Below are positions 6,811 through 52,096 of a stretch of DNA of 64,000 bases, in pieces. Made by a program: the position numbers and the translations under genes. How positions within the stretch are numbered: position 1 is the first letter of the stretch; each line of letters opens with the position of its first letter. Source of the DNA: Ostrea edulis (lineage: Eukaryota); the NCBI RefSeq assembly GCF_947568905.1, contig NC_079164.1, positions 27,280,001 to 27,344,000 of the forward strand. Direction: 5' to 3'. The notes under the pieces were generated by a model. The model saw nothing but the letters and a program-made list of their open reading frames with translations, had not been told where the DNA came from and searched no databases.

Positions 6811-9800
6811 TGAAATGTATGCTGATTTCGTCTCCGTGTATGGAAACACAATACTGGAACAATTACACACTCCAATGTTTCCAGAACCACAGTATATATA
6901 TCACACGCCACATCGGTAAAGATGTCGTCCAGCAATGGACTCCGCCAGAAAATACATCGGGATGTCAGGAAATGATTTCAAATTATTGTAGTTTTTCATT
7001 ACCACTCGAAGAAATGATAAGAAAATATTCATCACCGTTTGCATCTGCAGTAAACCAATGTAATAACAAAAGAGAGTGTACATTACCTGCAGATTATTTT
7101 GGAAAAATTGATTCCGATCTTCGAAGTTTATGCAAGGACAGTCTTAACATCTCGTTTCGTCAGAGTATTGAATATGAATGCATACCAGGTGTGTACATGT
7201 ACACATATTTCTGAACCTATTCAATATCTGGCTAGTTTATTTATAATGTTTCAGACGAATTCGTGAATATTTTATTTTTTGTTCTTCGTAGATGCACATG
7301 TAGTGAGGAACTGTTCCGGAGTAACGGACAATAGATCAAAACATATTTACCTACAGCTCTTTGACGGATTTAGTGACCAGCCTTGTCATGTTTACGCCGA
7401 TTTATCAAAAGTTAAAATTTTACAAACCTACCAGACAGAGTTACGCATTTCATCGAATGGAATTCTTATCTATGGTATGAAATGTCAGCGAAGATTTTTG
7501 TTTACTTTTACATTATCTATGCATTGACATGGGACCAAGATATATTCATTTCAAAGATACAGAATTATTTGAAGGCCATTCAACCATAGAATCTATAGTC
7601 GTTTAGGATATGTTGACCTTCACATCCAGTAGTACCAATAGACCCACGGGCTGTATCGATCATCTGAGTATCATGTAATGCACATGTCAGGCACATAACA
7701 TTGTTTATCAAAGTGAGGGTGGAGGTGCCTTATCCTCAAGTGTTGTGTGCAATTGTGTGGTGCAAGTGATTGAGAACTAAATGTCCGTATGTTAAAATAG
7801 AAGCACAGGCAATCCTAGTATTGCTAATATCTCTGATGTAATAAGCAGTGTATTACTTCATAGTTTAAACCAAGATCCTCTTATTTGTATAGATCAACAG
7901 TCAGTACATCATCAAATAGTATCAAGAAAACAAGTTAAAACAAGTGATCTTGACCTTATTCAAATGACTTTGGTTCAAGGTTAATACACATTTTCCGGTT
8001 AGCAATCTTCGTGTATACACAAGTTAGATATTCAGGAGTAAATCTATTGAGTTAACTGCTGTCTGGCGTGTTTCATTCCGATTCTTACAATGAAGGCCGT
8101 TCTTGGCACACTGATTTTGACAACGAATAACTCCGTTTACCTGATCAAGATATAGGGCTCACGGCAGGTGTGACCGGTCGACAGGTGATGCTTACTCCTC
8201 CTATGCACCTGATCCCACCTCTAGTGTGTCCAGGGGTCCGTGTTTACCCAACTCTCTATCTTGTCTTGTTTATAGGAGTCATGAGATTGATCACTGTTCG
8301 TTACATTTCATGTTTACTATGAGCTATAGAACCCCACCCTTGGACCAGAACTACAAACCCGGGGTTTATGAATTTCATAATTTGGGCTTCATGTTCATCA
8401 TAACTATGCACCCAGTGTGTATTTTAGATGTTCAGAGTAATAACCATTTAATACATTTTCACAAGGTGGTTTCCTCAGAATTAGAGATCAATACATATTT
8501 GAATAACTATATATATAATACATGCAGCCGGTTCCTGGAACCCTTGGCCCATAAGACATGAATTCAACAGTTTTGATAAAGCCGGGTGTGCATTATACCA
8601 TGGGCATAATTTATTACTTAATATTTACATTCGTTGAATATTTTCTCTTATATTTCTTTTGGAATCAATCCCGTGGGGATCCGGGCTAGAATGGGTCCTC
8701 AGTAACCCTTGCTTGTCGTAAGAGATGACTAAATGAGGCGGTCCTTTGGATGAGATAGCAAAAACAGAGGTTCCGTATCATATCAGGTGTGGCACGATAA
8801 AGATTCCTCCCTGCCCAATGGCCATAAACGCCGAGCATAGACCTAAATTTTGCAGCTTTGCATCGGCAATAGTAACGTCTCCATCCGAGTGAAATATTAG
8901 TACGTTAAACAATACACAAACAATCAATCTTTTAGAATTGGCATTGCTTTCATCTGCGGCTAATAATACATGTATTTTGAAAACTAGTTCGATCCAGTTT
9001 TTAGTACCGCCTGTCTGCGTTATCATTACCAAATATGGAACATCATCAAGATCAAACGGTGAATTGGTTGTTTCGTTTAACGTAACGAATGAGTCAATCA
9101 TACATTATTTTAATACGTATTTCTAGTCTTTTTGTATGCTTCGAAAATACATAAAACTATAGATATGAAGGTAGCAATCATTGCAGAAAAAATTCATGAT
9201 TTTTTCCCTGCAATGCTTGCTACCTTCATTACCCGATGAAACAACAAATAAAGCATTTTATTGTCTAAATATTGAGATATACAATGTTTGTACCTTTTGA
9301 AATTTTACCGACTGAAATGATAGCCATTTCGTCATGAATGCGGACTATATAGCACGTCTATTTTCACGGCTGAGAATTCAGATGAAGTTAAAAAATAAAT
9401 AGTGAAATGAATTTCAATTTTGAAAAATACTTCAGGATATGAACTCCAACGCTTCATGCCAGCATATGCATTTTCAACATATGATACATATGGCATATAC
9501 ATGTAGCTCCATCTTGAAGCTTAAATCCTTGATCCAGGGATATTGATAGAAGCATTCATGCTCAATAAATGCCTAGTTTAAATATACAGTATATTTTCAC
9601 CGTATGATCCAATGCTGGTCTCAGATTACACACTTTTGTCAGAGACCTAATAGCTCATATTTTAGCAGTTACATGTATGTATTTTTACCATCTGATCCAT
9701 GAGTTTCACTTTTCTAGTAAAGGTTTCAGTCCTACCCTGGGATTCCATAAGGTCAGGGACCACAAAATTCACAATGTTTGTTCCCCTTCCTAAATTTATG

Positions 9801-11061
9801 CCCCACAACAAAATTAATTTTGAAAAGTAAGTAAAGGCACCTAGAAAAGTTAATGACGGACGACGCAAGATGACGGATGGACACGTTAAGAAATAGGTCA
9901 TTTGAAATCTCAGGATACTGGTAAAACTTGTCGCTACTTTTGCTATTTAATCTAAAGTCATTTTACAGAACACCTAGCGTCCAATGCTGGCCTATATGGT
10001 GTAGACATTCCTCTGTTTACAAACCACCTGATAATTGATATGCGGGAAAGAAGTACAAATACCTATATAATGATGAAATTAGAAGGTATGGTGCATTTAA
10101 AAAGAAATGGAGCTCTGAAATATATGGTATAGTTTCACTCTGTTTTACATGAAATTTTGTTTTCATTGAATATTTGTAATCAGAATTATACCCAACATCA
10201 CTTCCTTCTATGTAGAAAAGTATAACCACCATTTCCATTATCTTTTCATACTAGTCAAGAAATCGTCAAAAATCGTCTTTGAAGTCGGAGGATCTCACGG
10301 TAGCATCAAAATTGTGAAAAGTAAGTGAAATACTACAATATTTGATAAATGACATTTTTGTTTTGTTCCCTTGTATCTGTCAGTTCTTCGATGGGCTAAC
10401 AGTATGAGGCATAAATGACATTGCAGTTAAATATTCTAACGTCTTAGTATGAAGCAGATAAAAGGCGAAGATAACGAACGGTGATCAATCTCATAACTTC
10501 CACAATCAATACAAAATAGAGAGTTGGGTAATCAATCATCTTTAAACAGCTTGATTATATGTCATGCGGTTCGTTTCTTTCAGAGGAGACCCACACCAGT
10601 GCCTTCATATGGATTCCCACCATATTCACCGTGATGCTTATTCTCCTTGTATCATTTTCAATCTGTCAACAAAGGTACATAAAGGAAAAAAAACTATTAA
10701 CTTTTAATACATCAAATAAAATATCAGGCGGTTGCTATTCAGATTTTATTTAAATTAGGCTAATATATATATATATTTCAGAATGCAGCACTCGAGGTCG
10801 GCAGTAATCGACATGGCTGATACTGGTGGTAAACTCGTATTCCGACTGGAGACCAAAAGAAAGGGCAATGGTATCAAGATAGAGATGCATAAAGCGGAGT
10901 GTTTGTGTGAACCGCCTCAGTCGCGCACCACAAGAGTAATCTCTTATCCTCTGTACATACCCTCCAAACATGTCAGCACAGTAAATAACACAATGAACAG
11001 TGAACAAGACCTCTCAGATGCAGAATCTGAAACTTACATAGATATGTTATCAAGAAACTAG
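6811..11061 (+). CDS. Gene A: SUEL-like lectin domain / beta-rich domain / TM / Tyr-motif tail type I receptor (first exon unresolved)
   Basis: Phase-compatible exons with AG/GT boundaries: 6811-7188 (8-Cys SUEL-like, ...CNNKRECTL...LC...IEYEC), 7292-7474, 9969-10085 (EHLASNAGLYGVDIP...), possible 10255-10320 and 10384-10401, TM exon 10584-10674 (FIWIPTIFTVMLILLVSFSIC), last exon 10782-11061 ending ETYIDMLSRN*. Exon 3 and exon 4 lengths (183, 117 nt) equal those of paralog B. Confidence 0.85.
8058..8310 (+). mobile_element. PLE 3'-terminal fragment (intron of gene A; copy at ~36827-37085)
   Basis: CTGTCTGGCGTGTTTCAT...GATGCTTACTCCTCCTATGCACCTGATCCCACCTC...GAGATTGATCACTGTTCG. Confidence 0.75.
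8670..8929 (+). mobile_element. SINE-like element with (AATC)n tail (copy at ~37445-37705)
   Basis: CCGTGGGGATCCGGG...GCTTGTCGTAAGAG...GGTGTGGCACGATAAAGAT...AGACCTAAATTTTGCAGC...GACGTCTCC...CAATCAATC; about ten related copies on both strands in the window. Confidence 0.75.
9165..9229. repeat. 22-bp-arm palindrome (21/22 match) inside an intronic repeat; copy at 37940-38004
   Basis: ATGAAGGTAGCAATCATTGCAG-spacer-CTGCAATGCTTGCTACCTTCAT. Confidence 0.9.
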
Positions 11062-12294
11062 TAAAGAACACTGGATTTGACAAACGACAGCGATGTGATT
11101 TACAAAGATAGACTCACGGCGCATTAATTCATATTCCGCCTGCGAGCAGGTCGTAATATAAGTACAGACGATGTATCCGATGATATTCGATTTTATTTAT
11201 AGTACATATAAAAAATTTATTCCTTGCCAAAAATATGAGAAACCCAAATTCTACCTGAAATTTTATCCCTTGATAATCTACGGTAGTAGTTAACGTTAGA
11301 TAGAAATTCATTTGGTCAAAATCCAAGAAAGTGTCCTTGAAACAAAAATCCTGCTGCACCTCTCGAAACAGACGCCGTGTTTAGCAAACTGTAATAAGAG
11401 TGTTCTTTAAAAAGATTTCTGATTTGCATCATAACATGTATTTTCGAAATGAAGAACGTTTTTAAGTGTGCATGACGTTATGAACTTCCAGTTGCTCTCC
11501 TGGCATATGTTCTATGATGAGCATATGCGAAAAATACCCGGATTTGACTTTGGACTAGTTTTATACTTGTACTATCTCAATAAAGGCTGGGTATATTGAA
11601 GTTACCCTGGTCCGTCCGCCTGTCACACTTTCTTTTTCCTCAAACTTTTTTTGAATATGAAAAATATTTTTTTTATTTGTTCTCAATAAATTGCGATTAC
11701 ATTGTGATATACTTGTTCGATTCTAAATATTAAAGGAAGAGTTGTTGTGTATTGCTGGCACATAGTGAAACACTATGTGCTACCTTAGTAAACAACTCTG
11801 ACATATATGTATTTGTTTGACACAAACAAACGGCACATTGCATCAAAATCTGCATTTTGATAAGTACATGTATAAATTGTCATACAGTAAAAGGTCATAT
11901 CTCCTTAGAAAACAAAGATTGTGGTGAGTATTGCAAACTTCATTATGCCACTACGCAAGAATACACGTAAAAGGAAATCTACAAGACAGACAAACATTAC
12001 CGGCTCTTAGTAATTAGTGTTATGGGTCAGAACACACCATTGGTATAGCGCAGCAGAATTTACTAACAAAAGGGAACTAAACAATTAATAAGATTTCTTT
12101 ACAATTAATAATTGAAAGATAATTATAATTGTAAGAATAGCAAAATACTAACTACGGTAGTTGAATGATAAATCCAAACATAACCTACACACACAAAAAT
12201 ATTAATCCCAAATCGTAATTCCCAGTGAAATTAAATCCAACAGCATATAAAGGTGTCTAACCAGAGCCTTTTTATCATAAGAATTTCAGTATAT

Positions 12295-13300
12295 TTATAA
12301 TGGGAATGGATTTTCAGTACGATCTTGAAAGACAATGATGCAACCAATACGTAATCTTTCTACTAAAAATAACATATCCAGAACAATCTCGGTCACAGAT
12401 GTCAATGACAAGTAAACATAACTTTCTAGAACCATCCAAGTCAATTGAGTGCAAATAGTATTATACGTGTACACAACATTAGACTCAGCAATACCAGATA
12501 TTTCGCTGTCCACAGAACGAGTAGAACAAATCTTAGAATATCAATTATAACCTCTATGTTTCTATGTCTCAAAACATCAATTCTTTGACCCTAAACACAT
12601 TTGTAAACACCTTTTTGAAACTAGGGATCAATGATGACTTGGTTTACCTTGCAAACATTATACAGAACCAATATATTGCAGCATCTCTGAGAATTGTTTC
12701 GACATTCATAGAGTGGTTGTTTAGGTTTGAGATGGGGGTATTAACTATCCACCACTCCCAGGATGATTTTTTCTAGGGTTGATGATATTTTTTTTTTTTT
12801 AGATATTGTGTGTAGATTTTGACATACCTTTTTATGAAACTAAAGTTACGTTTCCTACATTTAATTCATTTGTGATGGTCTTGTCATTGATACAGGTTCT
12901 CAAAGCATTAGAATACGTACAAATACGTTAGATGACCCATTTCTTAATCTTACCAGCATTGCAATAAGTGAGAGAACATCCCTAATGGTTATACTTAAGC
13001 TTAGACTGAAATGCAGTGGATGGGAAGATAACCATCGCCAGCAAAGTAGTGTGTTGTGTTAGAGTTTCAATAGGCGACCTTGTTATATCCCTCTTTCTCC
13101 CTATGACACTGGTTCTCAAAATAGTAATATACTATTTAAAGCAGTTTAGTTTTAAGGACCTGGCAAATACAGCACATTTTCTAAATTCTACTATCGTGTA
13201 TGAAATGGTCCTGATTTCATCCAGAAATAAAAAAGCAGACAAATCCCATTGTCCGACCTCTCCAGAATCCCAGATAAAGTAGACTATCTATAGGTAATCA
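12295..13300 (+). pseudogene. decayed coding relic, possibly death-domain-like (copies at ~41100-42100 and ~60640-61420)
   Basis: Frames NTFLKLGINDDLVYLANIIQNQYIAASLRIVSTFIEWLFR and VVCCVRVSIGDLVISLFLPMTLVLK. Differences from the 60.6-61.4 kb paralog are enriched at third codon positions, but stops and frameshifts are present. Confidence 0.35.
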
Positions 13301-13349
13301 ATAGCATAAAAGCAATTCATATTGGTTGGATAATTGTATAGTGCTAACC

Positions 13350-13582
13350 GTCCCGCTCGAGAAGTTTTCGCTAATATGGAGACGTCACAATCCCTGGGGA
13401 AGGACGGTAAAATCAAGGCCAATGCTCGGCGCTTATGGCGTTTGAGCCTTTGAGCAGGTAGGGATCTTTATCGTGCTACACGTGCTCAGACTGAGTGCGT
13501 CGGTTTTTTAGGTCTCATCCGAAGGACAGTCCTCATTTAGACGCCTCTTTTGACAAGCTATCCTAACCAGGATCCCCCACGA
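13350..13582 (-). mobile_element. SINE-like element, reverse (copies at ~42155-42392, ~61490-61730)
   Basis: GGAGACGTCAC...GCTCGGCGCTTATGGC...GGGATCTTTATCGTGC...TCTCATCCGAAGGAC...GGATCCCCCACG. Confidence 0.75.
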
Positions 13583-15037
13583 GAAAAAGCAATTGATAGT
13601 TTAGTTGTAAAGTCGAAGTTATTTAAGGTTTTTAGGGCATTTCATAGGGTATATCAAATCTAGCCACCTGGTGCACCCACTATTACAAAGTTTACAGTTT
13701 TTGGGTTACGAACCCGTTCAATTATGAAAATACATGATAGATTAAAATGTAAAGACTTGAATACAAAATAAACATAAAATAACGATTTTACAAACAGATT
13801 TATAGCATGTGATGACAGCAAAATATTACATTTTCCCAGCGATATAGTGATGGACTTGCGTCATGAAACACTGTTTCATTGTGACGTCATATCATGTATT
13901 GGGTTACTACGGTGATTTTAATTTTGTCTTTAAACCATGAGGATGCGTATGCTATAATATTATAATAATTCAGATACGGACTATTTCTTCGTGGTATTCC
14001 AGCTTAGATTTAGAATAGTTGTGAATTTCCTGTGTAGAAATAGGAAGTGATGTGCGTTTATATGGATGACTTCAAGTGGAAGTATGATTTTTTTTAATGA
14101 AATATAGAATTTATGAAATCGATCACTATTCGTTTTCTACACTTGTTTATAAATACATTTTCACGTCCTCGTGCCGATGCACATTTATTTATGAGGGCAT
14201 ATCTAGGATTCATGTTACTGGGACCGGATAAATAAGTAAAAAGAATCGGAATTGTTTACTTGTTATTCTTCCGCATTTTTAATCATTAATATTTTCAGTC
14301 ATTGATGAGGATGTATTTTGTGGTAAATTTAGTAGTAGTTTTTCTCATACAGAACGTTAAAGGTAACTCTTTACAAGTGTTTTGATAATTATGAATGCTA
14401 TATGAGAGAATGGCTTTCAACAGTAATATGTTAGCACAATGACACTTCCTGTATCTAACCAAAGATATGACATTATTTTGACTATCTTGTGATAAAATTT
14501 ATTCTTATGTAGACTCTACCGTCATGCAAGTGATTTGTCTATTTCTCATACCGTGATTCAAACATGTTCAATTCATTTTATTGTGTAACTTAATGGATTT
14601 TAAATCGAATATTTCTTGCAAAAACATTTAGCTGAAAATGAAAATTGAGTTTGATTACAATGAAAATACTTACAAAACACGATTGGAAGTCAGATTTCTT
14701 TGGGTAACTTCAGTGGAACTCAGTAGTTAATATATAAATTTTCAAAATTAGGAAACAAAACAGTCCAACTTGATTATAAGACCGACGATTCGCGAACTTT
14801 AATTCTAAATCTTTCTTTGATTTTCTTTGATTTCAGCTCTTGAATAATTACAGACCAAAATCATTGTTAAGGTTATGATTTTCACTTGTTTCTAGGAATT
14901 CCAAGCAGATAAAGACATGTCACTAATAAAACAGAATAACATAATTATATCTATTCGAAGGTGATAATGATTTTCTGTTCAAATATTGTCTGTGCTTAAT
15001 AGTTATTTGTTTCATAATGGATTTTCCTTGATATTAG

Positions 15038-18000
15038 TCTATGAATGTTTCTGTTTTGAACTGAAAGGTTCGTTGATCAATTCTTCATGCAAGAAAACAA
15101 AAGACTGGAAGAACTACGATTGCCAATGCCCCATAAATCACACAATTTATATCAAACATCACGTCATCGAGGATGGTTTTCAAAGATTATCACCTATCGA
15201 CATTGTCCTCGGGTGTAACACCACGAACGCTGTGTATTGTGGTATCCAGTTCCCAGTCAACCATCGGACAGAAAGAAACAATAGTGCTTTTGCATCTGCT
15301 GTCAAGATGTGCAATGGCAAAAATCGGTGTAATCTGTCAAATGAATATTTTCAAACAATGGAGACAAGTCTTCGAAAATCCTGCAAAGACTCCAAACGAC
15401 CAGGGCTTCAGAATGCGTCATTTCGACAGAGCATTGTCTATGAGTGTATCCAAGGTAGTGTAATGAATGTTAAGTGAGAAATTTGATGTCCTAAAAATTC
15501 TTTGAAGATCTTTGGTCTGCATTTATCCACTTTTCTCCATGTTTGTAGATTATCAAGTCGTTGATACATGTGTGTACAGAAAAGATACCAGAAGTCCCCA
15601 AATTTATCTACAGTCGACTGGTAACAAGGGTAACTGTTCTTGTCACATAAGTGGTGACGTGTCACGAGTCGAAATTTTACAGACTGTTATGGTGGAACTT
15701 ATGATGTCTGACAATGGAATCCTTCATTACGGTTAGATGTTATCAATTCAATGTAAATAATCAAACCACAGATAGAAAAAAGCACTAATTTTAATACATA
15801 CTTGTAAAAACAAATAAACTACCTCTTTTGTTCTTTCAACTATAATTCCGTGGGGATCCTGGTTAGAATAGGTCCTCAGTACCCCCTGCTTGCCGTAAGA
15901 AGCGACTAAATAAGGCAGTCCTTCGGATGAGACCGCGAAAACCGAGGTCCCGTGTGACAACAGGTGTGGCACGATAAAGATCCCTCCCTAACCAATGGTC
16001 AGAAGCGCTGATCGTAGGCCTAAATTTTGCAACCCTTCACCGGAAATGATGAAGTCTCCATATGAGTGACATATTCTCCAGAGGGCGTTAACCAAATACA
16101 ATCAATCAATTTTTCAACCATGGTCCAGTTAGACATGTCATTACCGGTGATGGAGATATAGTTCAAAGGAAGGAATCACTTATTTCAAACTATTCTTAAT
16201 TCAGAGATTTCCGGTCTTTCACTTTAAACGCATCAAAGCAAGAGCTTGTTCTGCGTATAGTCAACTTTTAAATCGAGTTTAACAAATAAGTTGATGTAAC
16301 TGGGGTTTCAACAGTCAATATTTCGCATATTTCATGGTTGTTATAAAGATTTAATTTACCAATACAACCTGTTATTAAGTAAAATGCTGTCTGACATGAT
16401 CAAACTGCCCTCCTTCTCTCTCCCAAAGTGAAACGGATGGAACCAATGTAATCTCCCTTTCCAATTTACTTACCATTCATACATTTATTATATTACTACC
16501 ACCACTAAAAGAGTCGGGTGGGGCCAATCCGCCAATATATCTTATTTTGCATGTCAAAATAACTTAGTTTGCATATAGAAATAAGGAAAGTTAGACAAAA
16601 AAGTGTAGAGACAGCCCCCTGCTTCTATGTTCGTGATATGTTGGTATCTCAAGTGCATGTGAAGATTTTCTCTAGCGCGAGTTTGTCGACATTTGGTATC
16701 ATGAACATTTATATAACTTTTTAAATTAACAGCACCAGCTTTTAATTATTGTAGAGGGAGATTACAGGAGTTGGACTCCTTTCATTTTGGAGGAGGAGCA
16801 GTTGAATAATAGGCGACCGCCATATCACTGAACAATCTTGAATAATCGACTTCACGCGAATATATGTTCACGCATACGAGTTATTTCACCCTATCAAGTA
16901 TTCGCACAAGAAATAAGGCTGCCAATTAAATTGAGTGGCGATCACCAGTTAAATTAAGTGGTGGCCACCGTCAAATAATTTATTTGATTCAATCAATTTA
17001 TATGGCGGCCGCCAAATAAATTAAATGGCGGCTGCCAGTTAAATAAATATTAATTCTATACCCTGGCACTTATCAGCTACCGTAGGTTTCTGATCGAATG
17101 TTTTCGCTCCCATGGTTAATATTTGAATCTTTGTTGCCTTTGCATGCATACAGTTTTTAATTTCCACAAACCCAATTGATAAGAATCAAACTTTCTTGCT
17201 ATAAGTGTTAATGAGAATATCAAAGATTTCATGAATATGAGATAAAGTATTATCATCAGCAAAATGTATAACTTAAGACTGAGAAATGACATTCAAAACC
17301 TATTAGAAAGCTAGGGTCCCAAAATGAAGCTTTTGGGTTACACCTTCTTAATACGGTTGATTCCTAAACATACACGAGGAATTTATTATCGCGTAATTTC
17401 CCTAGATGCATCACTCGCAAAATAAATTATTCGCTTTAAAATACATAGTAGAAATCTTGAATAATCGACTTCACGCGAATTTATGTGCAGGCGATTTGAC
17501 GCATACGAGTTATTTCTCTCTATCAAGTATTCGCACAAAAAATTAGGAATCCAAAATATTGACCCAATTACTTAATACACCTTGAACATTGTACTTTGGC
17601 AGACTTTCTTCTATTTCTGAGGCAATCCTTTACCAATTGAATTACATTTCCACTAAACCATGTAATGCAGCTTTACAGTTTAAATTATCCTGTGGTAATG
17701 TCTTAGGTCGCAAAACTTTTCTCGAATCAACAACATTAAAACGTATGACTTTTCAACACTTTACTCGACCATTCCTCAAACTAAATTAAAGACTAGACTT
17801 TTTGACATCATAGATAGTTGTTTCTTTAACAAAAAGGAACAACGCAAATATTCCTATCTTGTGATCAGTCATCCAAAAAATTACTTTATTAAACGCCACT
17901 CTGATTCCACGCACAAGTACTCTGAATTTCAATTAAATAATATGCTAGCGTTGCTCATTGACAATATTCTCGTGGTCTTTTGTGATCAGGTCTTCCAACA

Positions 18001-19086: not shown

Positions 19087-19125
<39 letters not shown>

Positions 19126-22463: not shown

Positions 22464-22495
22464 TTTTGTTCATGAGGTGATTTCATTAACGAAAT

Positions 22496-22605
22496 GTGAT
22501 TTTGTAAATGAATTTTGATTCTGTAAATAAATTGTAATTTTGTAAATGAATTGTGATTTTGTAAAGAAATTGTGATTTTGTAAATAAAGTGTGATTTTGT
22601 AAATG
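22496..22605 (+). repeat. ~19-bp minisatellite immediately 3' of the gene B stop codon (copy ~52128-52258 with an extra unit)
   Basis: Units of GTGATTTTGTAAATGAATT. Confidence 0.9.
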
Positions 22606-32315: not shown

Positions 32316-32365
<50 letters not shown>

Positions 32366-33368: not shown

Positions 33369-33427
<59 letters not shown>

Positions 33428-39535: not shown

Positions 39536-39590
<55 letters not shown>

Positions 39591-39873
39591 CAGAATGCAG
39601 CACTCGAGGTCGGCAGTAATCGACATGGCTGATACTGGTGGTAAACTCGTATTCCGACTGGAGACCAAAAGAAAGGGCAATGGTATCAAGATAGAGCTGC
39701 ATAAAGCGGAGTGTTTGTGTGAACCGCCTCAGTCGCGCAGCACAAGAGAAATCTCTTATCCTCTGTACATACCCTCCAAACATGTCAGCACAGTAAATAA
39801 CACAATGAACAGTGAACAGGACCTCTCAGATGCAGAATCAGAAACTTACATAGATATGTTATCAAGAAACTAG
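35580..39873 (+). CDS. Gene A': duplicate of gene A receptor
   Basis: Exons 35580-35957, 36061-36243, 38745-38861, possible 39031-39096, 39360-39450, 39594-39873; splice sites and frames intact. Confidence 0.85.
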
Positions 39874-43840: not shown

Positions 43841-46800
43841 TCTATGAATGTTTCTGTTTTGAACTGAAAGGTTCGTTGATCAATTCTTCATGCAAGAAAA
43901 CAAAAGACTGGAAGAACTACGATTGCCAATGCCCCATAAATCACACAATTTATATCAAACATCACGTCATCGAGGATGGTTTTCAAAGATTATCACCTAT
44001 CGACATTGTCCTCGGGTGTAACACCACGAACGCTGTGTATTGTGGTATCCAGTTCCCAGTCAACCATCGGACAGAAAGAAACAATAGTGCTTTTGCATCT
44101 GCTGTCAAGATGTGCAATGGCAAAAACCGGTGTAATCTGTCAAACGAATATTTTCAAACAATTGAGACAAGTCTTCGAAAATCCTGCAAAGACTCCAAAC
44201 GACCAGGGCTTCAGAATGCGTCATTTCGACAGAGCATTGTCTATGAGTGTATCCAAGGTAGTGTAATGAATGTCAAGTGAGAAATTTGATGTCCTAAAAA
44301 TTCTTTGAAGATCTTTGGTATCCATTTATCTACTTTTCTCCATGTTTGTAGATTATCAAGTCGTTGATACATATGTGTACAGAAAAGATACCAGAAGTCC
44401 CCAAATTTATCTACAGTCGACTGGTAACAAGGGTACTTGTTCTTGTCACATAAGTGGTGACGTGTCACGAGTCGAAATTTTACAGACTGTTATGGTGGAA
44501 CTTATGATGTCTGACAATGGAATCCTTCATTACGGTGAGATGTTATCAATTCAATGTAAATAATCAAACCACAGATAGAAAAAAGCACTTATTTCAATAC
44601 ATACTTGTAAAAACAAATAAAATACCTCTTTTGTTCTTTCAACTATAATCCCGTGGGGATCCGGGTTAGAATAGGTCCTCGGTACCCCATGCTTGTCGTA
44701 AGAAGCGACTAAATAAGACGGTCCTTCGGATGAGACCGTGAAAATCGAGGTCCCGTATCACAACAAGTGTGGCACGATAAAGATCCCTCCCTAACCAATG
44801 GTCAGAAGCGCTGATTGTAGGCCTAAATTTTGCAGCCCTTCACCGGCAATGATGAAGTCTCTATATGAGGGACATATTCTCCAGAGGGCGTTAACCAAAT
44901 ACAATCAATCAATTTTTCAACTATAGTCCAGTTAGACATGTCATTACCGGTGATGGAGATATAGTTCAAAGGAAGGACCTGGAATCACTTATTTCAAACT
45001 ATTCTTAATTAAGAGATTTCCGGTCTTTCACTTTAAACAAATCAAAGCAAGAGCTTGTTCTGCGTATAGTCAACTTTTAAATCGAGTTTAACAAATAAGT
45101 TGATGTTACTGGGGTTTCAACAGTCAATATTTCGCATATTTCATGGTTGTTATAAAGATTTAATTTACCAATACAACCTGTTATTAAGTAAAATGCTGTC
45201 TAACATGATCAAACTGCCCTCCTTCTCTCTCTCCCAAAGTGGAACGGATGGAACCACTGTAATCTCCCTTTCCAATTTACTTACCATTCATACATTCGTT
45301 ACATGTATATTACTAACACCACTAAAAGAGTGGGGTGGGGCCAATTCGCCAATATATCTTATTTTGCATGTGAAAATAACTTAGTTTACATATAGAAATA
45401 AGGAAAGTTAGACAAAAAAGTGGAGAGACAGCCCCCTGCTTCTATGTGCGTGATGTGTTGGTATCTCAAGTGCATGTGAAGATTTTCTCTAGCGCGAGTT
45501 TGTCGACATTTGGTATCATAAACATTTATATAACTTTTTAAATTAACAGCACCAGCTTTTGATTATTGTAGAGGGAGATTACAGGGGTTGGACACCTTTC
45601 ATTTTGGAGGAGGAGCAGTTGAATAATAGGCGGCCGCCATATCACTGAACAATCTTGAATAATCGACTTCACGCGAATATATGTTCACGCATACGAGTTA
45701 TTTCACCCTATCAAGTATTCGCACAAAAAATAAGGCCGCCAATTAAATTGAGTGGCGATCACCAGTTAAATTAAGTGGTGGCCACCGCCAATTAATTTAT
45801 TTGATTCAATCAATTTATATGGCGGCCGTCAAATAAATTAAATGGCGGCTGCTAGTTAAATGAATATTAATTCTATACCCTGGTACATATCGGCTACCGT
45901 AGGTTTCTGATCGAATGTTTTCTCTCCCATGGTTAATATTTGAATCTTTCTTGCCTTTGCCTGCATACAGTTTTTAATTTCCGCAAACCCAATTGATAAG
46001 AATCAAACTTTCTTGCTATAACTGTTAATGAGAATATCAAAGATTTCATGAATATGAGATGAAGTATTATCATCAGCAAAGTGTATAACTTAAGACTGAG
46101 AAATGACATTCAAAACCTATTAGCTTGCTAGGGTCCCAAAATGAAACTTTGGGTTACACCTTCTTGATACTGTTGATTCCTAAACATACACGAGGAACTT
46201 ATTATCGCGTAATTTCCCTAGATGCATCACTCGTAAAATAAATTATTCGCTTTAAAATACATAGTAGAAATCTTGAATAATCGACTTCACGCTAATATAT
46301 GTTCACGCATACGAGTTATTTCACCCTATCAAGTATTCGCACAAAAAATAAGGAATCCAAAATATTGACCAAATTACTTAATACACCTTGAACATTGTAC
46401 TTTGACAGACTTTCTTCTATTTCTGAGGCAATCCTTTACCAATTGAATTACATTTTCCACTAAACAATGTAATGCAGCTTTACAGTTTAAACTATCCTGT
46501 GGTAATGCCTTAGGTCGCAAACCTTTTCTCGAATCAACAACATCCAAACGTATGACTTTTCAACACTTTACACGACCATTCCTCAAAATAAATTAAAGAC
46601 TACACTTTTTGACATCATAGATAGTTGTTTCTTTAACAAAAAGGAAAAACACAAATATTCTTATCTTGTGATCAGTCATCCAAAAAATTACCTTATTAAA
46701 CGCCACTCTGATTCCACGCACAAGTACTCTGAATTTGAAATGAAAAATATGCTAGAGTTGCTCATTGACAATATCCTCGTGGTCTTTTGTGATCAGGTCT

Positions 46801-48511
46801 TCCAACCGTCTGTTGGAATTTCCATGGGCACGAATTGTGCTCATTTGTTAGTTGAACTGTTTTTATATTCCTATGTAGCACAATTTATTCAAAAACTTCT
46901 ACGTGAGAAGAAAATATATCTTGCTGTGGCCTTCAATTCGACATTTAGAGATATCGACGATGTATTATCTATTAACAATAATGATTTTCATTCATATATC
47001 GATTCAATATTCCCCAGTGAACTCGAAATAAAAGACACCACAGAGTCGTCCACTAATGCTTCATACTTAGATATTTTATTAAAAGTAGATATTGACGGCA
47101 AACTAACAACTTAACTTTATGATAAACGGGATGATTTCAACTTCTCCATCATCAACTTCCCATCTTTATTTAACAATATTACATTATAACCTGCATATGA
47201 AGTTTCTGGTTCGATACGCAATAGCTTGTTCTGCGTATTGTCAGTTTTTAAATCAAAACAGACTAGTGACAAATTAGTTGATGATGCAGGGGTTCCAACA
47301 ATTTTGTTTAAAATCAGCATTTCGCAAATTCTATGGTTGTTATAACGATCTTGTTCGCCAATACAACCTACCATTGGGTCAAATGCTGTCTGTCGTGTTT
47401 CATACTGATTGTAAGGCCTTTCTTGGCACCCTGATTTTGAACTTTGTTTACCTGATCAAGATATAGGGCTCACGGCAGGTGTCACCGGTGGGCAGGGGAT
47501 CCTTACTCCTTCATAGGCACCTGATCTCACCTCTGGTTTGTTCGGGGATCCGTGTTTGCCTAACTATATATTTTGCATTGCTTATAAGAGTTATGAGATT
47601 GATCAATGTTTGTTATCTTCACCTTTCATCCATTAAAATTGCTACAACATACAAATTACTTATTTCATCAGTAACGACATGTCCATCTCGACTATAGGTA
47701 AAGGAAAAAGAATAACAAGAGCATGTGGGAGGATTTTGTGTCTGGTGGTCTATATCTAGGCAGCGTAAAGTTTGATGCGATAGTAGAGGTCTATTTGTTC
47801 GAAATACAGGGTGTAAACTTGAAAAAGAAATATGATGGAACACAATACAGAAATTTCTCAATCTGATATGAATTACTATAGGTTTACATTCAATAACTAT
47901 TTATCAGGATAGAATTTGTTATTTACTGAGAGAAATAATTTTGTCACATTTAATTCATGAATGTAAATAGATATACTTATTTTTGATACTCTAGAACACC
48001 AAAACTACAATGTTGATTTATATGGAGTCAAAGTTCCCCCTTCAAAAGAAAAACTGCTCGTGAAAATAAAGACACATTCTACAGAGAGTCGAGTACTGAT
48101 TAAAGTAGCGGGTGAGTACTCTACTGGTTATAGTAGCGGGTGAGTACTCTACTGGTTATAGTAGCGGGTGAGTACTCTATTGGTTATAGTAGCGCGTGAG
48201 AATTCTACTGATTATAGTAGCGAGTTAGTACTCATCTGATTATAGTAGCGAGTTAGCACTCTGCTATTTTTTCAAAAATGGTTTCAATTAGAGAGAGAGA
48301 AAACCGCATCATTTTTGCATCAATTAATATCATAAAACACAATACGAAAAAGGGCAAGTGTAAATTATTTACATTTCTAATAAAAAAGACACTACTACAC
48401 TAAATTAAGAACTAAACAATCCGTGTACTAGGATGTGAATATCGCATCAGCGATCTGATAAGAGTAAAGACGTCGGTCTAGAGAGTTCATACCAGCATCG
48501 GGTTGGAATGA

Positions 48512-48565
<54 letters not shown>

Positions 48566-51500
48566 AAAATATAGAAAGTAGGAAAAGGTAAAGAGCAAAA
48601 TTACAAAACAACGAGATTGTGAAATAAAGAGGATGAAAATATATCAAATTATAGTAATTAGGGTTTTAAAAAGTGGATAGTAATTCGAACTACTGTGGAT
48701 TATTTATTATAGGATGTGTGAGATTAATCACTATTCGTTATCTTCATATTTTCATTCTTTAGAAAATTGTTTTGAATTTATGATAATTGTACTCTTATTT
48801 GGTGACTCATGCAACTGATTAATGTCATTTAAGTAAATTTTTAAGAGATGGCTTTCAAATCTAATAAACTATTTAATGACGTATTGCTAAGATTGGCTTG
48901 TTATTCCGAATCACTGATAATATCAATGATTTCAAAATGTTTAAAGTGTATCCAGAAATTATCCCTATCTTTCACTTGATGTTTATCTTTAAATATCCAC
49001 TAAGAAAGCGGCTCCAAGACGTCCTCTACATTTACGCCATAAATTCATCTATATGCATATATATTATATGAAAACAGAGTATTGGATCAAATCATAGCAT
49101 TAAATTTATCATAGAAGCAGGGTAATGACTGATATTTAAGGGTTTACAATTGCTTTTTGTTATTGTCTTGTTTTGTTTGCAGGAAATGTAACATTTTATT
49201 GTATGAAGGAAGAATTAACTGCCAATACCAACGAACACAGTCAGTCAATAAATGATTCAGAGAGTCTTTTAAGGGTTGAGGCATTGGAAGCCACAGCTTC
49301 TTCATCACCGTCTGAACCAGATCTTGATAGAACTACTATATCAGAACCGTCCTATTTGGAGGATGTTAGTCCCACTAAGAGCAGCATCACAGCGAACAAA
49401 CAGAGGAATGGTGACAACTTGGGTAACAGTAAGTATAGTTTGCAGGAAAGCCTTCCATATAGAGACATAATGGTCATGATAAGTCTGCATTCAATTATAT
49501 CAATGGCATTTTATCCGAAACTTACATTCTATAGAAAATCCATATATCTTTTAAAAAGAGAATATGAAAAAGACGAACTTAAGACCTTGTCCAAATGGAA
49601 TAAAAGCATAAGAGGAATATTAACATCCCGTATTAGAACAAAAGTACGTAAATCTATCCTACTGTGTGTGGAGAAACTTCAAACAAACTGTGCCACAACA
49701 TATGCAAGAAACAGTGTATATCAAATGGGGAGTATAAAAGATTCTACAGAACTATTAGTAAATTTGAAATAGCAAAACTTTTTTTCAAATCAACATCAAA
49801 ACATATGGCTTTACAATACTTTACACGACCATTCCTCACGATAAACTAACGACTTCACCTTTTCATATCGTAGACAGTTGCTTCTTCGACAAAAATTAAA
49901 AAGGAACTATTATATCCAGTGAACAGTCATCCAAACAATTGCTTTGTTAAACACCATTCTGATTCCACGCACAAGTACTCTGAAGTTGAACAAAAATATG
50001 CTGGAGTTTTTCATTGACAATATTCTCGTGGTCTTTCATGATCAGGTCTTCCAACAATCTGTTGGAATTACCATGGGCACGAACTGTTGTCATCTGTTAG
50101 CTGACCTGTTTTATATTTTTATGAAGCAGAGTTGATTAAAACAAACTTCTACATCAGAAGAAAAAAATTTCTTGCTGTGGCTTTCAACTTGATATTTAGA
50201 TATATCGATGACGTTTCATATAATAATCGTTTTCATTCATATGTCGATTCAATATATCCCTGTAAACTCCAGATAAAAGGCACCACAGTCTTCCATATCT
50301 TCTTCGCACTAGATATTTCTTTGATATGAATATTAACGGCAAACTAACAACCCAACTTTATGACAAACGGAATGCTTTCAGGTAATCCATCGTCAATTTC
50401 CTATATTTATGTAGCAATATTCCATTATCACCTGCATATGGTGTGTATAACTTTCAACTGATTCAATAGGCAAAAAGCTTGTTCCTTGTATGGCCAATTT
50501 ATTTTAAAATCGAGGCAGATTACTGACAAAGAACGTTTGTGCTTTGTATATTGGAAGCAATGAAATACTTATACTCCTATTGTCCTTTCAAAAGATGAAA
50601 TTCTTCAAAACCATGCTTCAGGTTTAGACACATTTAATATCCAAGTCAATGGGTCGAAAGAATATGAGTTACCGTACCTATACTGGATTCCTAAACTACA
50701 TAAAACCATTACAAACAAATATACATTGCTGGCTCCAGTAAGTTCCTATATTTGCTCCTCACAAAAATATCAACAGCAAAATAACAACCCAACTTTATGA
50801 CAAACGGAATGCTTTCAGGTAATCCATCGTGAATTCCCCCATATCTATGTAGGAATATTCCATTATCACCTGCATATGGTGTTTATACCTCTCAACTGAT
50901 TCGATACGCAAGAGCTTGTTCTGCGTCTGATCAGTTTTGAAATTGAGGCAAGCTGCTGACAAACACGGGTTTCACCAATCTCGTTAAAAGTCAGCATTTC
51001 ACAAATCTTATGGTCGTTATAACCCTCTAGTTTGCCAATACAATCTATCATTGGGTCAAATGCTGTCTGACGTGTTTCATACCAATTATTAGGCCGTTCT
51101 CTGCACACTGATTTTGACGACGGATAACTCCGTTTACCTGATTAAGATATAGGACTCGTGGCGGGTGTGACCGGTGGACAGGGACTGCTTACTCCTCCTA
51201 GGCAACTGATCGCACCTCTGATGTGTACAGGGGTCCATGTTTAACCAACTATATTTTGTATTCCTTATAGGAGTCATGAGATTGATCACTGTTCGTTTTC
51301 TTCACCTTACATAAGCATAGATTATTGACATGTAAAACTTATACGGTACCAATTTTGATGCACCAGATGCGCATTTCGACAAATAATGTCTCTTCAGTGA
51401 TGCTCAACCGAAATGTTTGAAATCCGAAATAACTATGAAGTTTTAGAGCTAAATATAGCCAAAAACAGCGTGCCAAAAAAAAAGTGGAGCCAAATTCGTC

Positions 51501-52096
51501 CAAGGATAAGAGCTATGCATGAAGGGGATAATCCTTAATTTTTTCTTTTTTTATTTTATCTAGATCCATCACTTTCTTCGTTCGAAAGATATGGAGGTCC
51601 TTTGACTTGGATTATCACGTTCCTCATTGCTGTATTGATTCTTCTTGTATTTTTTCTGATCATCAAACAGAGGTATTCTTAAGATCAATAATTCATATGC
51701 AAATTACCAGTAAATGATTCAACAAATATGTTTTTAAACGTCCACTAATATTTCCGTTTTGTACTCGTGTAATTAGCTTTACTCATGTTCCAAAATGTAC
51801 AGCTGATAATGATGAAAATATAAAATTTCAGACGACTGGATTTAAACACAGCGGTGATCCATGTAAGCAATGTGGGTGACAGATTTTTGCTCAAGCTCAC
51901 TCCTCAACGAGAATCCAGCAACTCACAGTTAGAGATCCACAGAGCAGGATGTTTGTGTGATCAACCAGAAACCAACGACCTTCAAACTTCTGTACAGCAA
52001 TATGAACCTTTACAGAATGTTAACGTCAATAACGTCACAGTGTATAGTGAACTCAGTCATACACATGAATACATTGATATTTTACAGGAAACGTGA
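43841..52096 (+). CDS. Gene B': duplicate of gene B receptor
   Basis: Exons 43841 (or 43871)-44257, 44352-44534, 47995-48111, 49183-49428, 51564-51672, 51832-52096; frames intact; tail TVYSELSHTHEYIDIL. Confidence 0.87.
44650..44912 (+). mobile_element. SINE-like element with putative 11-bp TSD
   Basis: TTTCAACTATA occurs just before the 5' end and just after the (AATC)n tail. Confidence 0.8.
46400..47640 (+). mobile_element. decayed PLE RT fragment with complete 3' end
   Basis: VGISMGTNCA, FRDIDDVL, IKDTTESSTNASYLDILL, then the conserved 3' terminus; about 0.6 kb of this is missing in copy 1. Confidence 0.85.
51332..51537 (-). mobile_element. ~206-bp ribozyme-bearing insertion unique to copy 2
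   Basis: Absent at the orthologous site (~21920, GATTATTGCCAT|ATTTCTTTC). Confidence 0.8.
51360..51403 (-). ncRNA. minimal type I hammerhead ribozyme
   Basis: Minus strand: GCATCA (stem I) CTGAAGA (core) GACA-TTATT-TGTC (stem II) GAA ATGCGCAT (palindromic helix III) C (cleavage site, AUC) TGGTGC (stem I', 6 bp including one G-U). Confidence 0.85.

What the first reader, a model, noticed from the sequence alone, without database searches (positions are those of the whole stretch)
6811..52096. Array of SUEL-like / beta-domain / TM receptors with tyrosine-motif tails: candidate paired immune or recognition receptor family
Manual splicing yields four intact type I receptor models (A, B, A', B') hidden from the ORF track. 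A and B share intron phases and two exon lengths (183, 117 nt) despite low identity. The N-terminal domain keeps the 8-Cys SUEL skeleton (C..L.C...C...C...C.xxxxC...C...YEC) but replaces the sugar-binding YGR and DPCxxTxKYL motifs with RHIGK/HHVIED and SLC..SFRQSI, so the ligand is probably not rhamnose/galactose. Tails differ. A has a single YIDM (YxxM, PI3K p85 consensus). B has YEPL plus TLYSEL-x5-YIDI, an ITSM/ITIM-like motif in a near-ITAM tandem. A clustered, duplicated pair with related ectodomains and different signalling tails resembles paired receptors. I do not recognise it as a named family.
Basis: partly seen in the sequence, partly recalled or inferred. Interest (0 to 1): 0.85.

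Follow-up and report, generated by a model that had tools for sequence, protein, structure and literature searches.

The report
Oyster lectin-like paired membrane receptor genes
The window holds four intact, already annotated but unnamed flat-oyster genes for single-pass membrane proteins with a sugar-lectin-like domain, a CUB domain and tyrosine-motif tails. With a fifth gene just outside the window they look like a mollusc version of vertebrate "paired" immune receptors.

Summary
Observation confirmed. The window is Ostrea edulis OX387704.1, 27,280,001-27,344,000. My four spliced models A, B, A', B' have 7 coding exons each, intron phases 1,1,1,1,1,2, and shared 183- and 117-nt exons. They equal four RefSeq "uncharacterized" proteins letter for letter.

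No Pfam family matches. AlphaFold models show a SUEL/rhamnose-lectin fold with 8 conserved Cys and no YGR/DPC/KYL motifs. Next comes a clear CUB fold (Z 10.4), then a variable stalk, a TM helix and a 90-115 aa tail with three tyrosines.

The N gap lies 1.8 kb upstream of A' exon 1. Its flanks are collinear with copy 1, and no exon of the four models crosses it.

A and B are old, separate subfamilies (about 43% identical ectodomains) with homologous tails, so they are not the pair. The real pair is B/B' and gene C (LOC125663858), which starts 461 bp past the window's end. Their ectodomains are 99.6% identical and their tails are unrelated. In four oyster species ectodomains group by species and tails by type (AU p 4e-44), which indicates concerted evolution. 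Function is inferred only. Whether A'/B' is a true tandem copy or a haplotype duplicate stays open (about 75:25).

The parts
6098..6149 (+). Gene A (LOC125663857) exon 1: ATG and signal peptide MVYAVELILFYIFLDLK, phase-1 donor
6811..7188 (+). Gene A exon 2: SUEL/RBL-fold domain with 8 conserved Cys
7292..7474 (+). Gene A exon 3 (183 nt): first half of the CUB-fold domain
   Evidence: The RNA contig ends at 7473/7474.
9969..10085 (+). Gene A exon 4 (117 nt): second half of the CUB-fold domain
   Evidence: The one RNA contig seen skips it.
10255..10320 (+). Gene A exon 5 (66 nt): short stalk
10584..10674 (+). Gene A exon 6: transmembrane helix, phase-2 donor
   Evidence: The RNA contig covers 10583-10674.
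10782..11061 (+). Gene A exon 7: cytoplasmic tail (Y351, Y354, Y381 = YIDM) and stop
14305..14362 (+). Gene B (LOC130052433) exon 1: signal peptide
15068..15454 (+). Gene B exon 2: SUEL/RBL-fold domain
15549..15731 (+). Gene B exon 3 (183 nt): CUB fold, first half
18572..18688 (+). Gene B exon 4 (117 nt): CUB fold, second half
19743..19988 (+). Gene B exon 5: Ser/Thr/Pro-rich glycosylated stalk
21944..22052 (+). Gene B exon 6: transmembrane helix
22199..22463 (+). Gene B exon 7: tail with YEPL (Y424), TLYSEL (Y438), YIDI (Y447) and stop
34867..39873 (+). Gene A' (LOC130052443 X1). Exons 34867-34918, 35580-35957, 36061-36243, 38745-38861, 39031-39096, 39360-39450, 39594-39873. Intact, 16 amino-acid differences from A.
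43108..52096 (+). Gene B' (LOC125663859). Exons 43108-43165, 43871-44257, 44352-44534, 47995-48111, 49183-49428, 51564-51672, 51832-52096. Intact, 17 amino-acid differences from B, including C156Y at a CUB cysteine.
3697..30651 (.). Copy 1 of the duplicated A-B unit
32328..60628 (.). Copy 2 of the duplicated unit (90-97% identical to copy 1), interrupted by the N gap
32911..33063 (.). Assembly gap. Its flanks are collinear with 4279 and 4361 of copy 1. It is intergenic, 1.8 kb upstream of A' exon 1.
30826..30841 (+). Alternative first coding exon (MKCTE) of RefSeq isoform X2 of A'. It has no signal peptide, and its intron spans the gap.

Best explanation
The window carries part of an oyster-specific gene cluster, ordered A - B - A' - B' in the window and then C just beyond it. 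All five encode type I membrane glycoproteins. Each has a signal peptide, a degenerate SUEL/rhamnose-lectin-fold domain (8 Cys kept, canonical sugar-contact motifs absent), a CUB-fold domain, a variable glycosylated stalk, one TM helix without a charged residue, and a 90-115 aa tail with exactly three tyrosines in conserved YxxØ-type motifs.

Shown:
- The gene structures and their intactness.
- The two folds.
- Restriction of this sequence family to Ostreidae.
- Conserved gene order (A, then a type-1-tail gene, then a type-2-tail gene) in Ostrea and two Saccostrea species.
- B/B' (type-1 tail: YxPL, YxEL-x5-YxD[IV]) and C (type-2 tail: NYQEIP, N[PA]xY, G[IV]YELQK) share an almost identical ectodomain under strong purifying selection (9 synonymous to 1 nonsynonymous change), while their stalk, TM and tail are old and unrelated.
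- The same discordance recurs in four oyster species, which indicates repeated homogenisation (gene conversion) of the ligand-binding exons between neighbouring genes.

Inferred:
- These are cell-surface recognition receptors. The SUEL-like plus CUB module binds a protein or a non-canonical glycan ligand.
- The tails are read by SH2 or PTB proteins after tyrosine phosphorylation. B's double motif would suit a tandem-SH2 partner of Syk or SHP type. C's tail would give a different output.
- B and C would then couple one ligand to two responses, as vertebrate paired receptors do.
- A/A' is a separate, older subfamily with a reduced version of the type-1 tail.
For: - Gene models equal RefSeq proteins.
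- A spliced RNA contig joins 7473|10583 at canonical sites and ends at the TM exon's donor.
- Only 22 relatives were found among 1.84 billion representatives, and all those that carry a name are oyster proteins.
- Fold of the N domain: the 13 best Foldseek PDB hits are all latrophilin Lec, CSL3 or SUL-I. All 8 hits with Z>=5 in an unbiased scan of 48,161 chains are SUEL-type domains, followed by a drop to Z 4.3. The only PDB sequence match of the family profile is the rhamnose lectin CSL2, at E 0.13. A language-model search gives 'SUEL-type lectin' at 0.91.
- CUB: Z 10.4, and the top 50 hits are all CUB domains with 85-95 residues aligned at 2.1-2.8 Å.
- B against C: 99.6% identical over lectin plus CUB. 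Exon 2 is 99.0% identical in DNA against 91-94% in the flanking introns. The stalk exon is 75% identical. dN/dS is 0-0.05 in the ectodomain with dS 0.05-0.08, against dS 0.45 in the stalk.
- The tree and AU test reject a single clade of type-2 ectodomains (ΔlnL 528, p 4e-44). Identity matrices agree.
- The genes are separate and adjacent in three species.
- Tail motifs are conserved across genera.
- Oysters have a working ITAM-Syk-ERK route (PMC6994640).
Against: - There is no functional, expression or phosphorylation evidence.
- B's tandem motif has a 5-residue spacer, not the 6-8 of the ITAM consensus. C has no canonical ITIM. No TM helix carries a charged residue. So 'activating versus inhibitory' cannot be assigned.
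- All the tyrosine motifs also fit YxxØ or NPxY sorting signals.
- The fold match of the N domain is moderate (Z 5.5-6.5, TM 0.44-0.56).
- No Pfam model matches any member, even at E<=10.
- The only RNA contig found has low depth (4.7), is 95-96% identical, carries another organism label, and skips A's 117-nt and 66-nt exons.
- The clade for the AU test was named after the tree had been seen.
Confidence: 0.6

Rival explanations
1. These are endocytic, scavenger or adhesion receptors rather than signalling immune receptors. In this reading the tail tyrosines are AP-2 sorting signals (YxxØ: YEPL, YSEL, YIDI, YIDM) or NPxY sorting signals. The two tail types would direct the same ectodomain to different trafficking routes. 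Alternatively the proteins act as co-receptors or scaffolds, like EVA-1, neuropilin, CDCP1 or DCBLD2.
For: Every motif fits YxxØ. Type-2 tails of Saccostrea and Crassostrea carry NPVY or NPGY. The nearest structural and feature neighbours are EVA-1/EVA1C, neuropilin-type CUB proteins, CDCP1 and DCBLD1, none of which is a classical immune receptor.
Against: Concerted evolution of the ectodomain with divergent tails is the signature described for immune paired receptors such as CEACAM and Siglec-11/16 (PMC2832619 and PMC5701461, listed). A tandem Tyr pair at fixed spacing is conserved between genera.
Confidence: 0.25
2. A'/B' is not a second locus. It is the other haplotype of A/B, wrongly placed in tandem across the scaffold gap, so the genome would hold only A, B and C.
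For: Copy 2 is interrupted by an assembly gap near its start. Coding divergence is only 2%, which is within the range of oyster heterozygosity (my own knowledge). In DNA of other samples, all 40 listed differences from A are the A' letter. Some samples show only one state at a site, such as the 22-bp indel at 6012. The Saccostrea species carry a single A - t1 - t2 set. The older LOC1256638xx gene numbers cover only one A, one B and C. That last point is an inference from NCBI's numbering practice.
Against: The contig that ends at 32910 holds the end of copy 1, then 1.7 kb of unique spacer, then 583 bp of the start of copy 2 at 94.7% identity. The sequence after the gap continues collinearly. 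The tandem junction therefore lies within contiguous sequence. The distal third of the unit is only 90-93% identical, which is high for alleles. Logan contigs pop bubbles, so single mosaic contigs do not show a single copy.
Confidence: 0.25
3. One reading: A and B themselves are the paired receptors. A would signal through PI3K p85 by YIDM, and B through an ITSM/ITIM-ITAM-like tandem.
For: A and B are adjacent, share their architecture, and differ in the number of Tyr motifs.
Against: Their ectodomains are 39-48% identical. They form two clades, each with Saccostrea orthologues. Their tails are homologous, with YIDM aligned to YIDI. No A-type tail from another species was available to test whether Met is conserved.
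Confidence: 0.1
4. The N domain is a working rhamnose/galactose lectin, and the proteins are glycan pattern-recognition receptors.
For: SUEL/RBL fold and Cys skeleton.
Against: The lectin-like domain of every member lacks YGR, DPC and KYL/GTxKY. No member reaches PF02140 even at E<=10. Latrophilin and EVA-1 use this fold for protein ligands (titles of 8suf, 6vhh and 5ftt).
Confidence: 0.1

Closest known systems
SUEL-type / rhamnose-binding lectin domain (Pfam PF02140; CSL3, SUL-I, latrophilin Lec, EVA-1/EVA1C)
   Same: The fold, a skeleton of 8 cysteines, the CxGKxxC core, and a position at the N-terminus of a membrane protein, as in latrophilin and EVA-1.
   Different: About 25 residues longer. 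No YGR, DPC or KYL motifs. Below every Pfam threshold. Followed by a CUB domain and a tyrosine-motif tail, not by olfactomedin/GAIN/7TM or a second SUEL domain.
CUB domain (PF00431; spermadhesins, neuropilin a1/a2, MASP/C1r/C1s, Kremen, CDCP1, DCBLD)
   Same: A beta-sandwich that superposes at Z 9-10.4 over 85-95 residues. Membrane-proximal in a type I protein, as in Kremen, neuropilin, CDCP1 and DCBLD.
   Different: About 100 aa, 4-17% identity, no Pfam hit, and 2-3 rather than 4 cysteines. The Ca2+ site was not assessed.
Uncharacterised spiralian 'SUEL-type lectin / CUB domain-containing' proteins in AlphaFold DB clusters (for example A0A815CA00, K1RAL9, R7UP01, V4ADR7)
   Same: The whole two-domain module superposes over query residues 2-231, with E down to 8e-11 and TM by query up to 0.58. 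The SUEL-like plus CUB tandem is therefore not an oyster invention.
   Different: 11-15% identity. The oyster family is not linked to them by sequence search. Their tails and genomic organisation were not examined.
Vertebrate paired receptors with concerted evolution (CEACAM1/CEACAM3, Siglec-11/16, Siglec-5/14, SIRP, CD300A/C)
   Same: Neighbouring genes with near-identical ligand-binding ectodomains, unrelated cytoplasmic tails carrying Tyr motifs, and ectodomains that cluster by species while tails cluster by type (papers listed).
   Different: A non-Ig scaffold. No canonical ITAM (spacer of 5), no clear ITIM in the partner, and no charged TM residue. No ligand, cell type or opposing function is known.
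Oyster ITAM or ITIM receptors (CgIgR-Syk-ERK, PMC6994640; NCAM1-SHIP2, PMC11841013)
   Same: Type I oyster membrane proteins whose tails carry tyrosine motifs. They show that the downstream machinery exists in oysters.
   Different: Those are Ig-superfamily proteins with canonical motifs and experimental support. This family has neither.

Membership tests
SUEL/RBL lectin domain (PF02140) | Sequence match to the Pfam model at or above its gathering score | tested here: not met
   No hit for the exons, for 10 full-length members, or for any of 26 members at E<=10. The family profile against PDB gives only CSL2, at E 0.13.
SUEL/RBL lectin domain (PF02140) | Alpha/beta fold of about 100 aa stabilised by eight cysteines | tested here: met
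   C9, C22, C51, C59, C83, C89, C107 and C123 are invariant or nearly so. Models have pLDDT 83-90. The top Foldseek and VIA hits are all SUEL-type domains. Disulfide pairing was not checked.
SUEL/RBL lectin domain (PF02140) | Sugar-contact motifs YGR, DPC and (GT)xKYL | tested here: not met
   Absent from the lectin-like domain of all members. The few regex hits fall in the CUB domain or elsewhere.
CUB domain (PF00431) | Sequence match to the Pfam model | tested here: not met
CUB domain (PF00431) | Beta-sandwich (jelly-roll) of about 110 aa that superposes on solved CUB domains | tested here: met
   Z 10.4 to spermadhesin. All top 50 hits are CUB domains, with 85-95 residues aligned at rmsd 2.1-2.8 Å.
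CUB domain (PF00431) | Four conserved cysteines (two disulfides) and, in many members, a Ca2+ site | tested here: inconclusive
   B has C156, C178 and C180. A has C151 and C175. B' and some Saccostrea and Crassostrea members lack the first Cys. The Ca2+ ligands were not examined.
Paired receptors | Highly similar ectodomains in two clustered genes | tested here: met
   Met for B/B' against C: 99.6% amino-acid identity and 12 kb apart. Also met in S. echinata (100%), with 84% in S. cucullata and 65% in C. gigas. Not met for A against B (39-48%).
Paired receptors | Cytoplasmic parts of opposite sign (ITIM against ITAM, or a charged TM helix that recruits an ITAM adaptor) | tested here: inconclusive
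   The tails are unrelated, but neither carries a canonical motif set and no TM helix is charged.
Paired receptors | Concerted evolution or gene conversion of the ligand-binding exons | tested here: met
   Tree and AU test. dS is 0.05-0.08 in the ectodomain against 0.45 in the stalk. A 1.76-kb tract is 96% identical in S. echinata.
Paired receptors | Shared ligand with opposing cellular responses | not testable with these tools
   Needs ligand identification and cell assays.
ITAM | YxxL/I, then 6-8 residues, then YxxL/I | tested here: not met
   B has YSEL-SHTHE-YIDI and Saccostrea has YTEL-SLTNE-YLDV. The spacer is 5 in both genera.
ITIM / ITSM | (S/I/V/L)xYxx(I/V/L), or TxYxx(V/I) | tested here: inconclusive
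   O. edulis B has TLYSEL and B' has TVYSEL: T at -2 and L at +3, which fits neither consensus strictly. Saccostrea STYTEL and C. gigas SNYTSL fit ITIM. A third tail type (the front part of P0014) has VVYTSL.
p85 PI3K docking site | A conserved YxxM | tested here: inconclusive
   A and A' have YIDM. The homologous site in B is YIDI. No A-type tail from another species could be retrieved.

The most novel reading that the evidence does not exclude
Oysters have a true paired-receptor system built on a non-immunoglobulin scaffold (degenerate SUEL-lectin plus CUB). A type-1-tail gene with a bi-tyrosine, ITAM-like module and a neighbouring type-2-tail gene keep the same ligand-binding surface through recurrent gene conversion. 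They deliver different signals, and the system is driven by a pathogen or self ligand. That would make it an independent, invertebrate invention of the decoy/counter-receptor logic known from CEACAM, Siglec and SIRP. The O. edulis-specific doubling of the A-B unit would be ongoing birth-and-death evolution.
Probability: 0.3. Interest if true: 0.8.

Novelty: new variant of a known kind. Interest (0 to 1): 0.62.

Why it matters
Paired receptors with concerted evolution are a hallmark of vertebrate innate immunity and are taken as footprints of host-pathogen arms races. Clear invertebrate cases are scarce, and the documented ones are Ig-based. Here a small, unnamed, oyster-restricted family with no Pfam match shows the same genomic signature on a different scaffold, in four species. 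The species include O. edulis and C. gigas, which suffer major infectious mortalities. The finding gives concrete, testable candidates: five O. edulis genes, defined motifs and a defined ectodomain. It also shows that structure prediction can place 'uncharacterized' mollusc genes into domain classes that sequence profiles miss. If instead the genes are trafficking or adhesion receptors, the family is a modest annotation gain.

Tried and rejected
- Pfam on single exons, on full-length proteins and on all 26 alignment members found no SUEL or CUB hit.
- The search for homologous proteins with the Saccostrea A-type protein, and with the A-type part of P0014, returned only the queries themselves. 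A's protein ids came later from a cluster look-up.
- The look-up of encoding contigs for isoform X2 of gene C found nothing on record. Isoform X1 worked.
- I first took ATG 6527 (MKIRVTIIIGFVLF...) and the donor at 6629 for A's first exon. I rejected this because the frames disagree and a stop follows at 6599. The true exon 1 is 6098-6149.
- tblastn of all family proteins found no further family exons in the window outside the four genes.
- The RNA search found one weak RNA-like run; the other six runs listed, three of which were laid (X2-X4), behave as DNA. So only two A junctions could be checked and none of B's.
- I tried to use the DNA runs to tell paralogues from alleles. All listed variants equal the A' state, but contig mosaics are uninformative because assemblers pop bubbles.
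- Rfam at gathering threshold over the whole window, and at E<=1 around 51200-51700, gave no real match.
- Literature searches for the LOC ids and for an oyster SUEL/CUB/TM receptor found no description.
- The small gene downstream of C was checked as a possible ITAM adaptor. It is a single-TM protein of about 160 aa without an ITAM.

Full report
**Where we are.** The window is Ostrea edulis chromosome record OX387704.1 (assembly GCA_947568905.1), positions 27,280,001-27,344,000. This follows from the locus coordinates returned for the proteins it encodes. It is AT-rich (32-38% GC) and full of repeats.

**Duplication and gap.**
- A unit at 3697-30651 recurs at 32328-60628. Identity is 96-97% over the genes and 90-93% over the distal third.
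- The N run at 32911-33063 lies inside copy 2. Positions 32328-32910 match 3697-4279 (94.7%), and 33064 onwards matches 4361 onwards. The two sides are therefore collinear with copy 1, and the gap stands for roughly 81 bp of intergenic sequence.
- The gap is 1.8 kb upstream of A' exon 1. No exon of the four models touches it, so no reading frame depends on it. Only RefSeq isoform X2 of A', whose first coding exon MKCTE lies at 30826-30841 and lacks a signal peptide, has an intron across it.

**Gene models.**
- A HMMER scan of 1.84 billion representatives with B's Cys-rich exon returned 22 proteins. The best of them (P0001, 454 aa) maps exactly onto seven window exons.
- I derived A by homology and splice logic, and A' and B' by mapping the exons onto copy 2.
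- All four are open, with AG/GT at every junction and intron phases 1,1,1,1,1,2.
- They equal RefSeq proteins exactly: A = LOC125663857, A' = LOC130052443 X1, B = LOC130052433 X1, B' = LOC125663859. All are named 'uncharacterized protein'.
The signal-peptide exon is 6098-6149, and A has a further 66-nt exon at 10255-10320.
- A and A' differ at 23 of 1167 coding bases (16 nonsynonymous codons, 6 synonymous). B and B' differ at 28 of 1365 (17 nonsynonymous, 10 synonymous).
- Changes between A and A' concentrate in the lectin-like domain (8 nonsynonymous, 1 synonymous). The numbers are too small for a test.

**Transcripts.**
- Only one RNA-like run held the sequence. One of its contigs (depth 4.7, 95-96% identical, another organism label) joins 7473 to 10583 and stops at 10674.
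- That supports the donor of the 183-nt exon and both ends of the TM exon, at canonical sites. It skips A's 117-nt and 66-nt exons.
- B's junctions rest on the RefSeq model alone. RefSeq also lists a 334-aa B isoform without a TM helix.

**Domains.**
- No Pfam model matches any exon or any of 26 family members, even at E<=10.
- AlphaFold with the family alignment gave a confident two-domain ectodomain for B (pLDDT 90) and a model of A's N domain (pLDDT 83).
- Second domain (B residues 151-250, encoded by the 183-nt and 117-nt exons): a CUB fold. Z is 10.4 to spermadhesin, and the 50 best rows are all CUB domains with 85-95 residues aligned at 2.1-2.8 Å.
- First domain, structural evidence: the 13 best Foldseek PDB hits are all SUEL/RBL domains (latrophilin Lec, CSL3, SUL-I). 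In a scan of 48,161 chains that does not rely on Foldseek, all eight hits with Z>=5 are of that type, and the next hit drops to Z 4.3. They include P113, RIPR and the C-terminal domain of rice beta-galactosidase; I call these three SUEL-like from my own knowledge.
- First domain, sequence evidence: the family profile's only PDB sequence match is the rhamnose lectin CSL2 at E 0.13, aligned on the CNGKxxC core. A language-model search points the same way.
- Eight cysteines are conserved. YGR, DPC and KYL are absent from this domain in every member.
Loss of the canonical sugar site is supported at the level of motifs.
- The two-domain module as a whole matches many spiralian proteins labelled 'SUEL-type lectin' or 'CUB domain-containing' in AlphaFold DB clusters (E down to 8e-11 over residues 2-231). 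The architecture is thus wider than oysters. The sequence family found by HMMER is oyster-only as far as names are given (Ostrea, Saccostrea, Crassostrea/Magallana).

**Tails.**
- Each tail has exactly three tyrosines. B has YEPL, TLYSEL and YIDI, with 5 residues between the last two motifs. A has SYPLYIPS and YIDM.
- The tails of A and B are homologous. They share the block G.(R/K)(F/L)...EIH(R/K)A.CLC, and YIDM aligns with YIDI.
- The type-1 tail is conserved in Saccostrea (YTPL, STYTEL-x5-YLDV) and more loosely in C. gigas (SNYTSL ... LYSDV).
- The spacer of 5 fails the ITAM consensus.

**The actual pair.**
- RefSeq LOC125663858, which I call gene C, starts 461 bp after the window's end (L002 10008 = window-equivalent 64461), 12 kb downstream of B'.
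- Its lectin-like and CUB domains differ from B's by one residue in 229. Its stalk is 75% identical in DNA. Its TM helix and tail (NYQEIP, NAVYES, GVYELQK) are unrelated to B's.
- Exons 2-4 show 9 synonymous changes and 1 nonsynonymous change. dS is 0.05-0.08, close to the 6-9% divergence of the alignable flanking introns. dS in the stalk exon is 0.45.
- So the ligand-binding part was homogenised, or duplicated, much later than the rest, and has since been under strong purifying selection.
- The type-2 tail is conserved in S. cucullata, S. echinata and C. gigas.
- In all four species the ectodomains of the type-1 and type-2 genes are closest to each other (100, 84, 100 and 65% identity) rather than to their tail-type orthologues (44-54%). 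Tails group by type.
- The maximum-likelihood tree shows four species-wise pairings. The AU test rejects a single clade of type-2 ectodomains (ΔlnL 528, p 4e-44). The caveat is that I named the group after seeing the tree.
- The genes are separate and adjacent, in the order type 1 then type 2, in three species. In S. echinata a 1.76-kb tract covering the ectodomain exons and introns is 96% identical between the two genes.
- This is the pattern described for CEACAM and Siglec paired receptors (PMC2832619 and PMC5701461, listed).
- A-type genes form their own clade with Saccostrea orthologues (100/100 support), so A and B diverged before these genera split.

**What it probably does.**
- Shown: the anatomy, the folds, conservation of the motifs, and concerted evolution.
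- Inferred: a surface receptor family whose ectodomain binds a protein or an unusual glycan, and whose tails are read through phosphotyrosine or sorting motifs.
- Oysters do possess an ITAM-Syk-ERK route (PMC6994640), so such signalling is possible.
- The motifs equally fit YxxØ or NPxY trafficking signals, and no sign (activating or inhibitory) can be assigned. I put 0.6 on the receptor-pair explanation and 0.25 on the trafficking/adhesion rival.

**True copy or artefact.**
- For a true tandem copy: the contig before the gap runs from copy 1 through 1.7 kb of unique sequence into the first 583 bp of copy 2. The distal third of the unit is 7-10% diverged.
- For an artefact: the gap lies near the start of copy 2, and coding divergence is only 2%. 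The Saccostrea species have a single set. The older gene numbers cover only one A and one B. In other individuals' DNA every listed difference from A is the A' state, sometimes alone.
- Logan contigs cannot settle this. I put about 75% on a true copy.

**Novelty.** The genes are annotated but unnamed. I found no Pfam family and no paper. The folds and the paired-receptor principle are known. What is new is their combination, the loss of the lectin motifs, and concerted evolution in a mollusc.

Noticed in passing
just past the window: L002 10008-21388 (window-equivalent 64461-75841): Gene C (LOC125663858, isoforms of 473, 470 and 462 aa) has B's ectodomain with a different stalk, TM helix and tail. 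It is the likely paired partner of B/B'. The window ends 461 bp before its start codon.
   Followed up: yes
window 51332-51541: B' intron 5 carries an insertion of about 210 bp that B lacks. It ends about 22 nt upstream of the acceptor of the TM exon. Rfam found nothing at gathering threshold and no hammerhead at E<=1, only a chance tp2 match.
   Followed up: partly
window 8000-8400, 8600-9000, 10400-10600 (A introns) and their copies in A': Very high-copy repeats. Summed word depth in DNA runs reaches 10^4-10^6 times the flanks. The ORF-like string LTPPMHLIPPLVCPGVRV recurs many times in the window, which suggests a SINE or another abundant element.
   Followed up: no
window 17861-18214, 20504-20895, 23413-24270(-), 46668-47114, 49944-50329: Fragments of a retroelement, with reverse-transcriptase-like ORFs. 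One has a weak RVT_1 match (E 2.4e-4, below gathering). They lie in B/B' introns and downstream of B.
   Followed up: partly
window 19988 onwards (B isoform X2, P0033): RefSeq lists a 334-aa isoform of B that ends after the stalk (…GNNDWI) without a TM helix. It could be a secreted form of the same ectodomain.
   Followed up: no
window 7474 / 10584: The only RNA contig found joins the 183-nt exon directly to the TM exon and skips the 117-nt and 66-nt exons. That would delete half of the CUB domain. It may be an isoform of a congener or a non-productive transcript.
   Followed up: partly
L002 23682 onwards; L004 19063-22378; L006 23312-25245: A small gene of about 160 aa with one TM helix (…LVVLSGIQTFFCVTIIASIAVLALYIR…) lies directly downstream of the type-2-tail gene in O. 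edulis, S. echinata and S. cucullata. It has no ITAM and its function is unknown.
   Followed up: partly
window 44378 region (B' codon 156): B' has C156Y at a cysteine of the CUB domain that most family members keep. Some Saccostrea and Crassostrea members also lack it.
   Followed up: partly
tails of B (residues about 381-388) and C (about 449-455): A short (G/S)DRF(L/V)L motif occurs in both tail types. In type 1 it is juxtamembrane and in type 2 it is near the C-terminus. The tails are otherwise unrelated.
   Followed up: no
window 1682-1828: A second assembly gap (147 N), upstream of the finding. Local repeats of about 0.3-0.6 kb (3013-3452 ~ 4217-4653; 3697-4038 ~ 4675-4958; 2134-2421 ~ 33573-33860) surround the start of the duplicated unit.
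   Followed up: partly
window 39540-39590 versus 10760-10780; 32330-32380; 48500-48560: Microsatellites. A (TA)n run in the last intron of A is expanded in A'. A (CT)n run lies just before the gap. Another (TA)n run lies in a B' intron.
   Followed up: no
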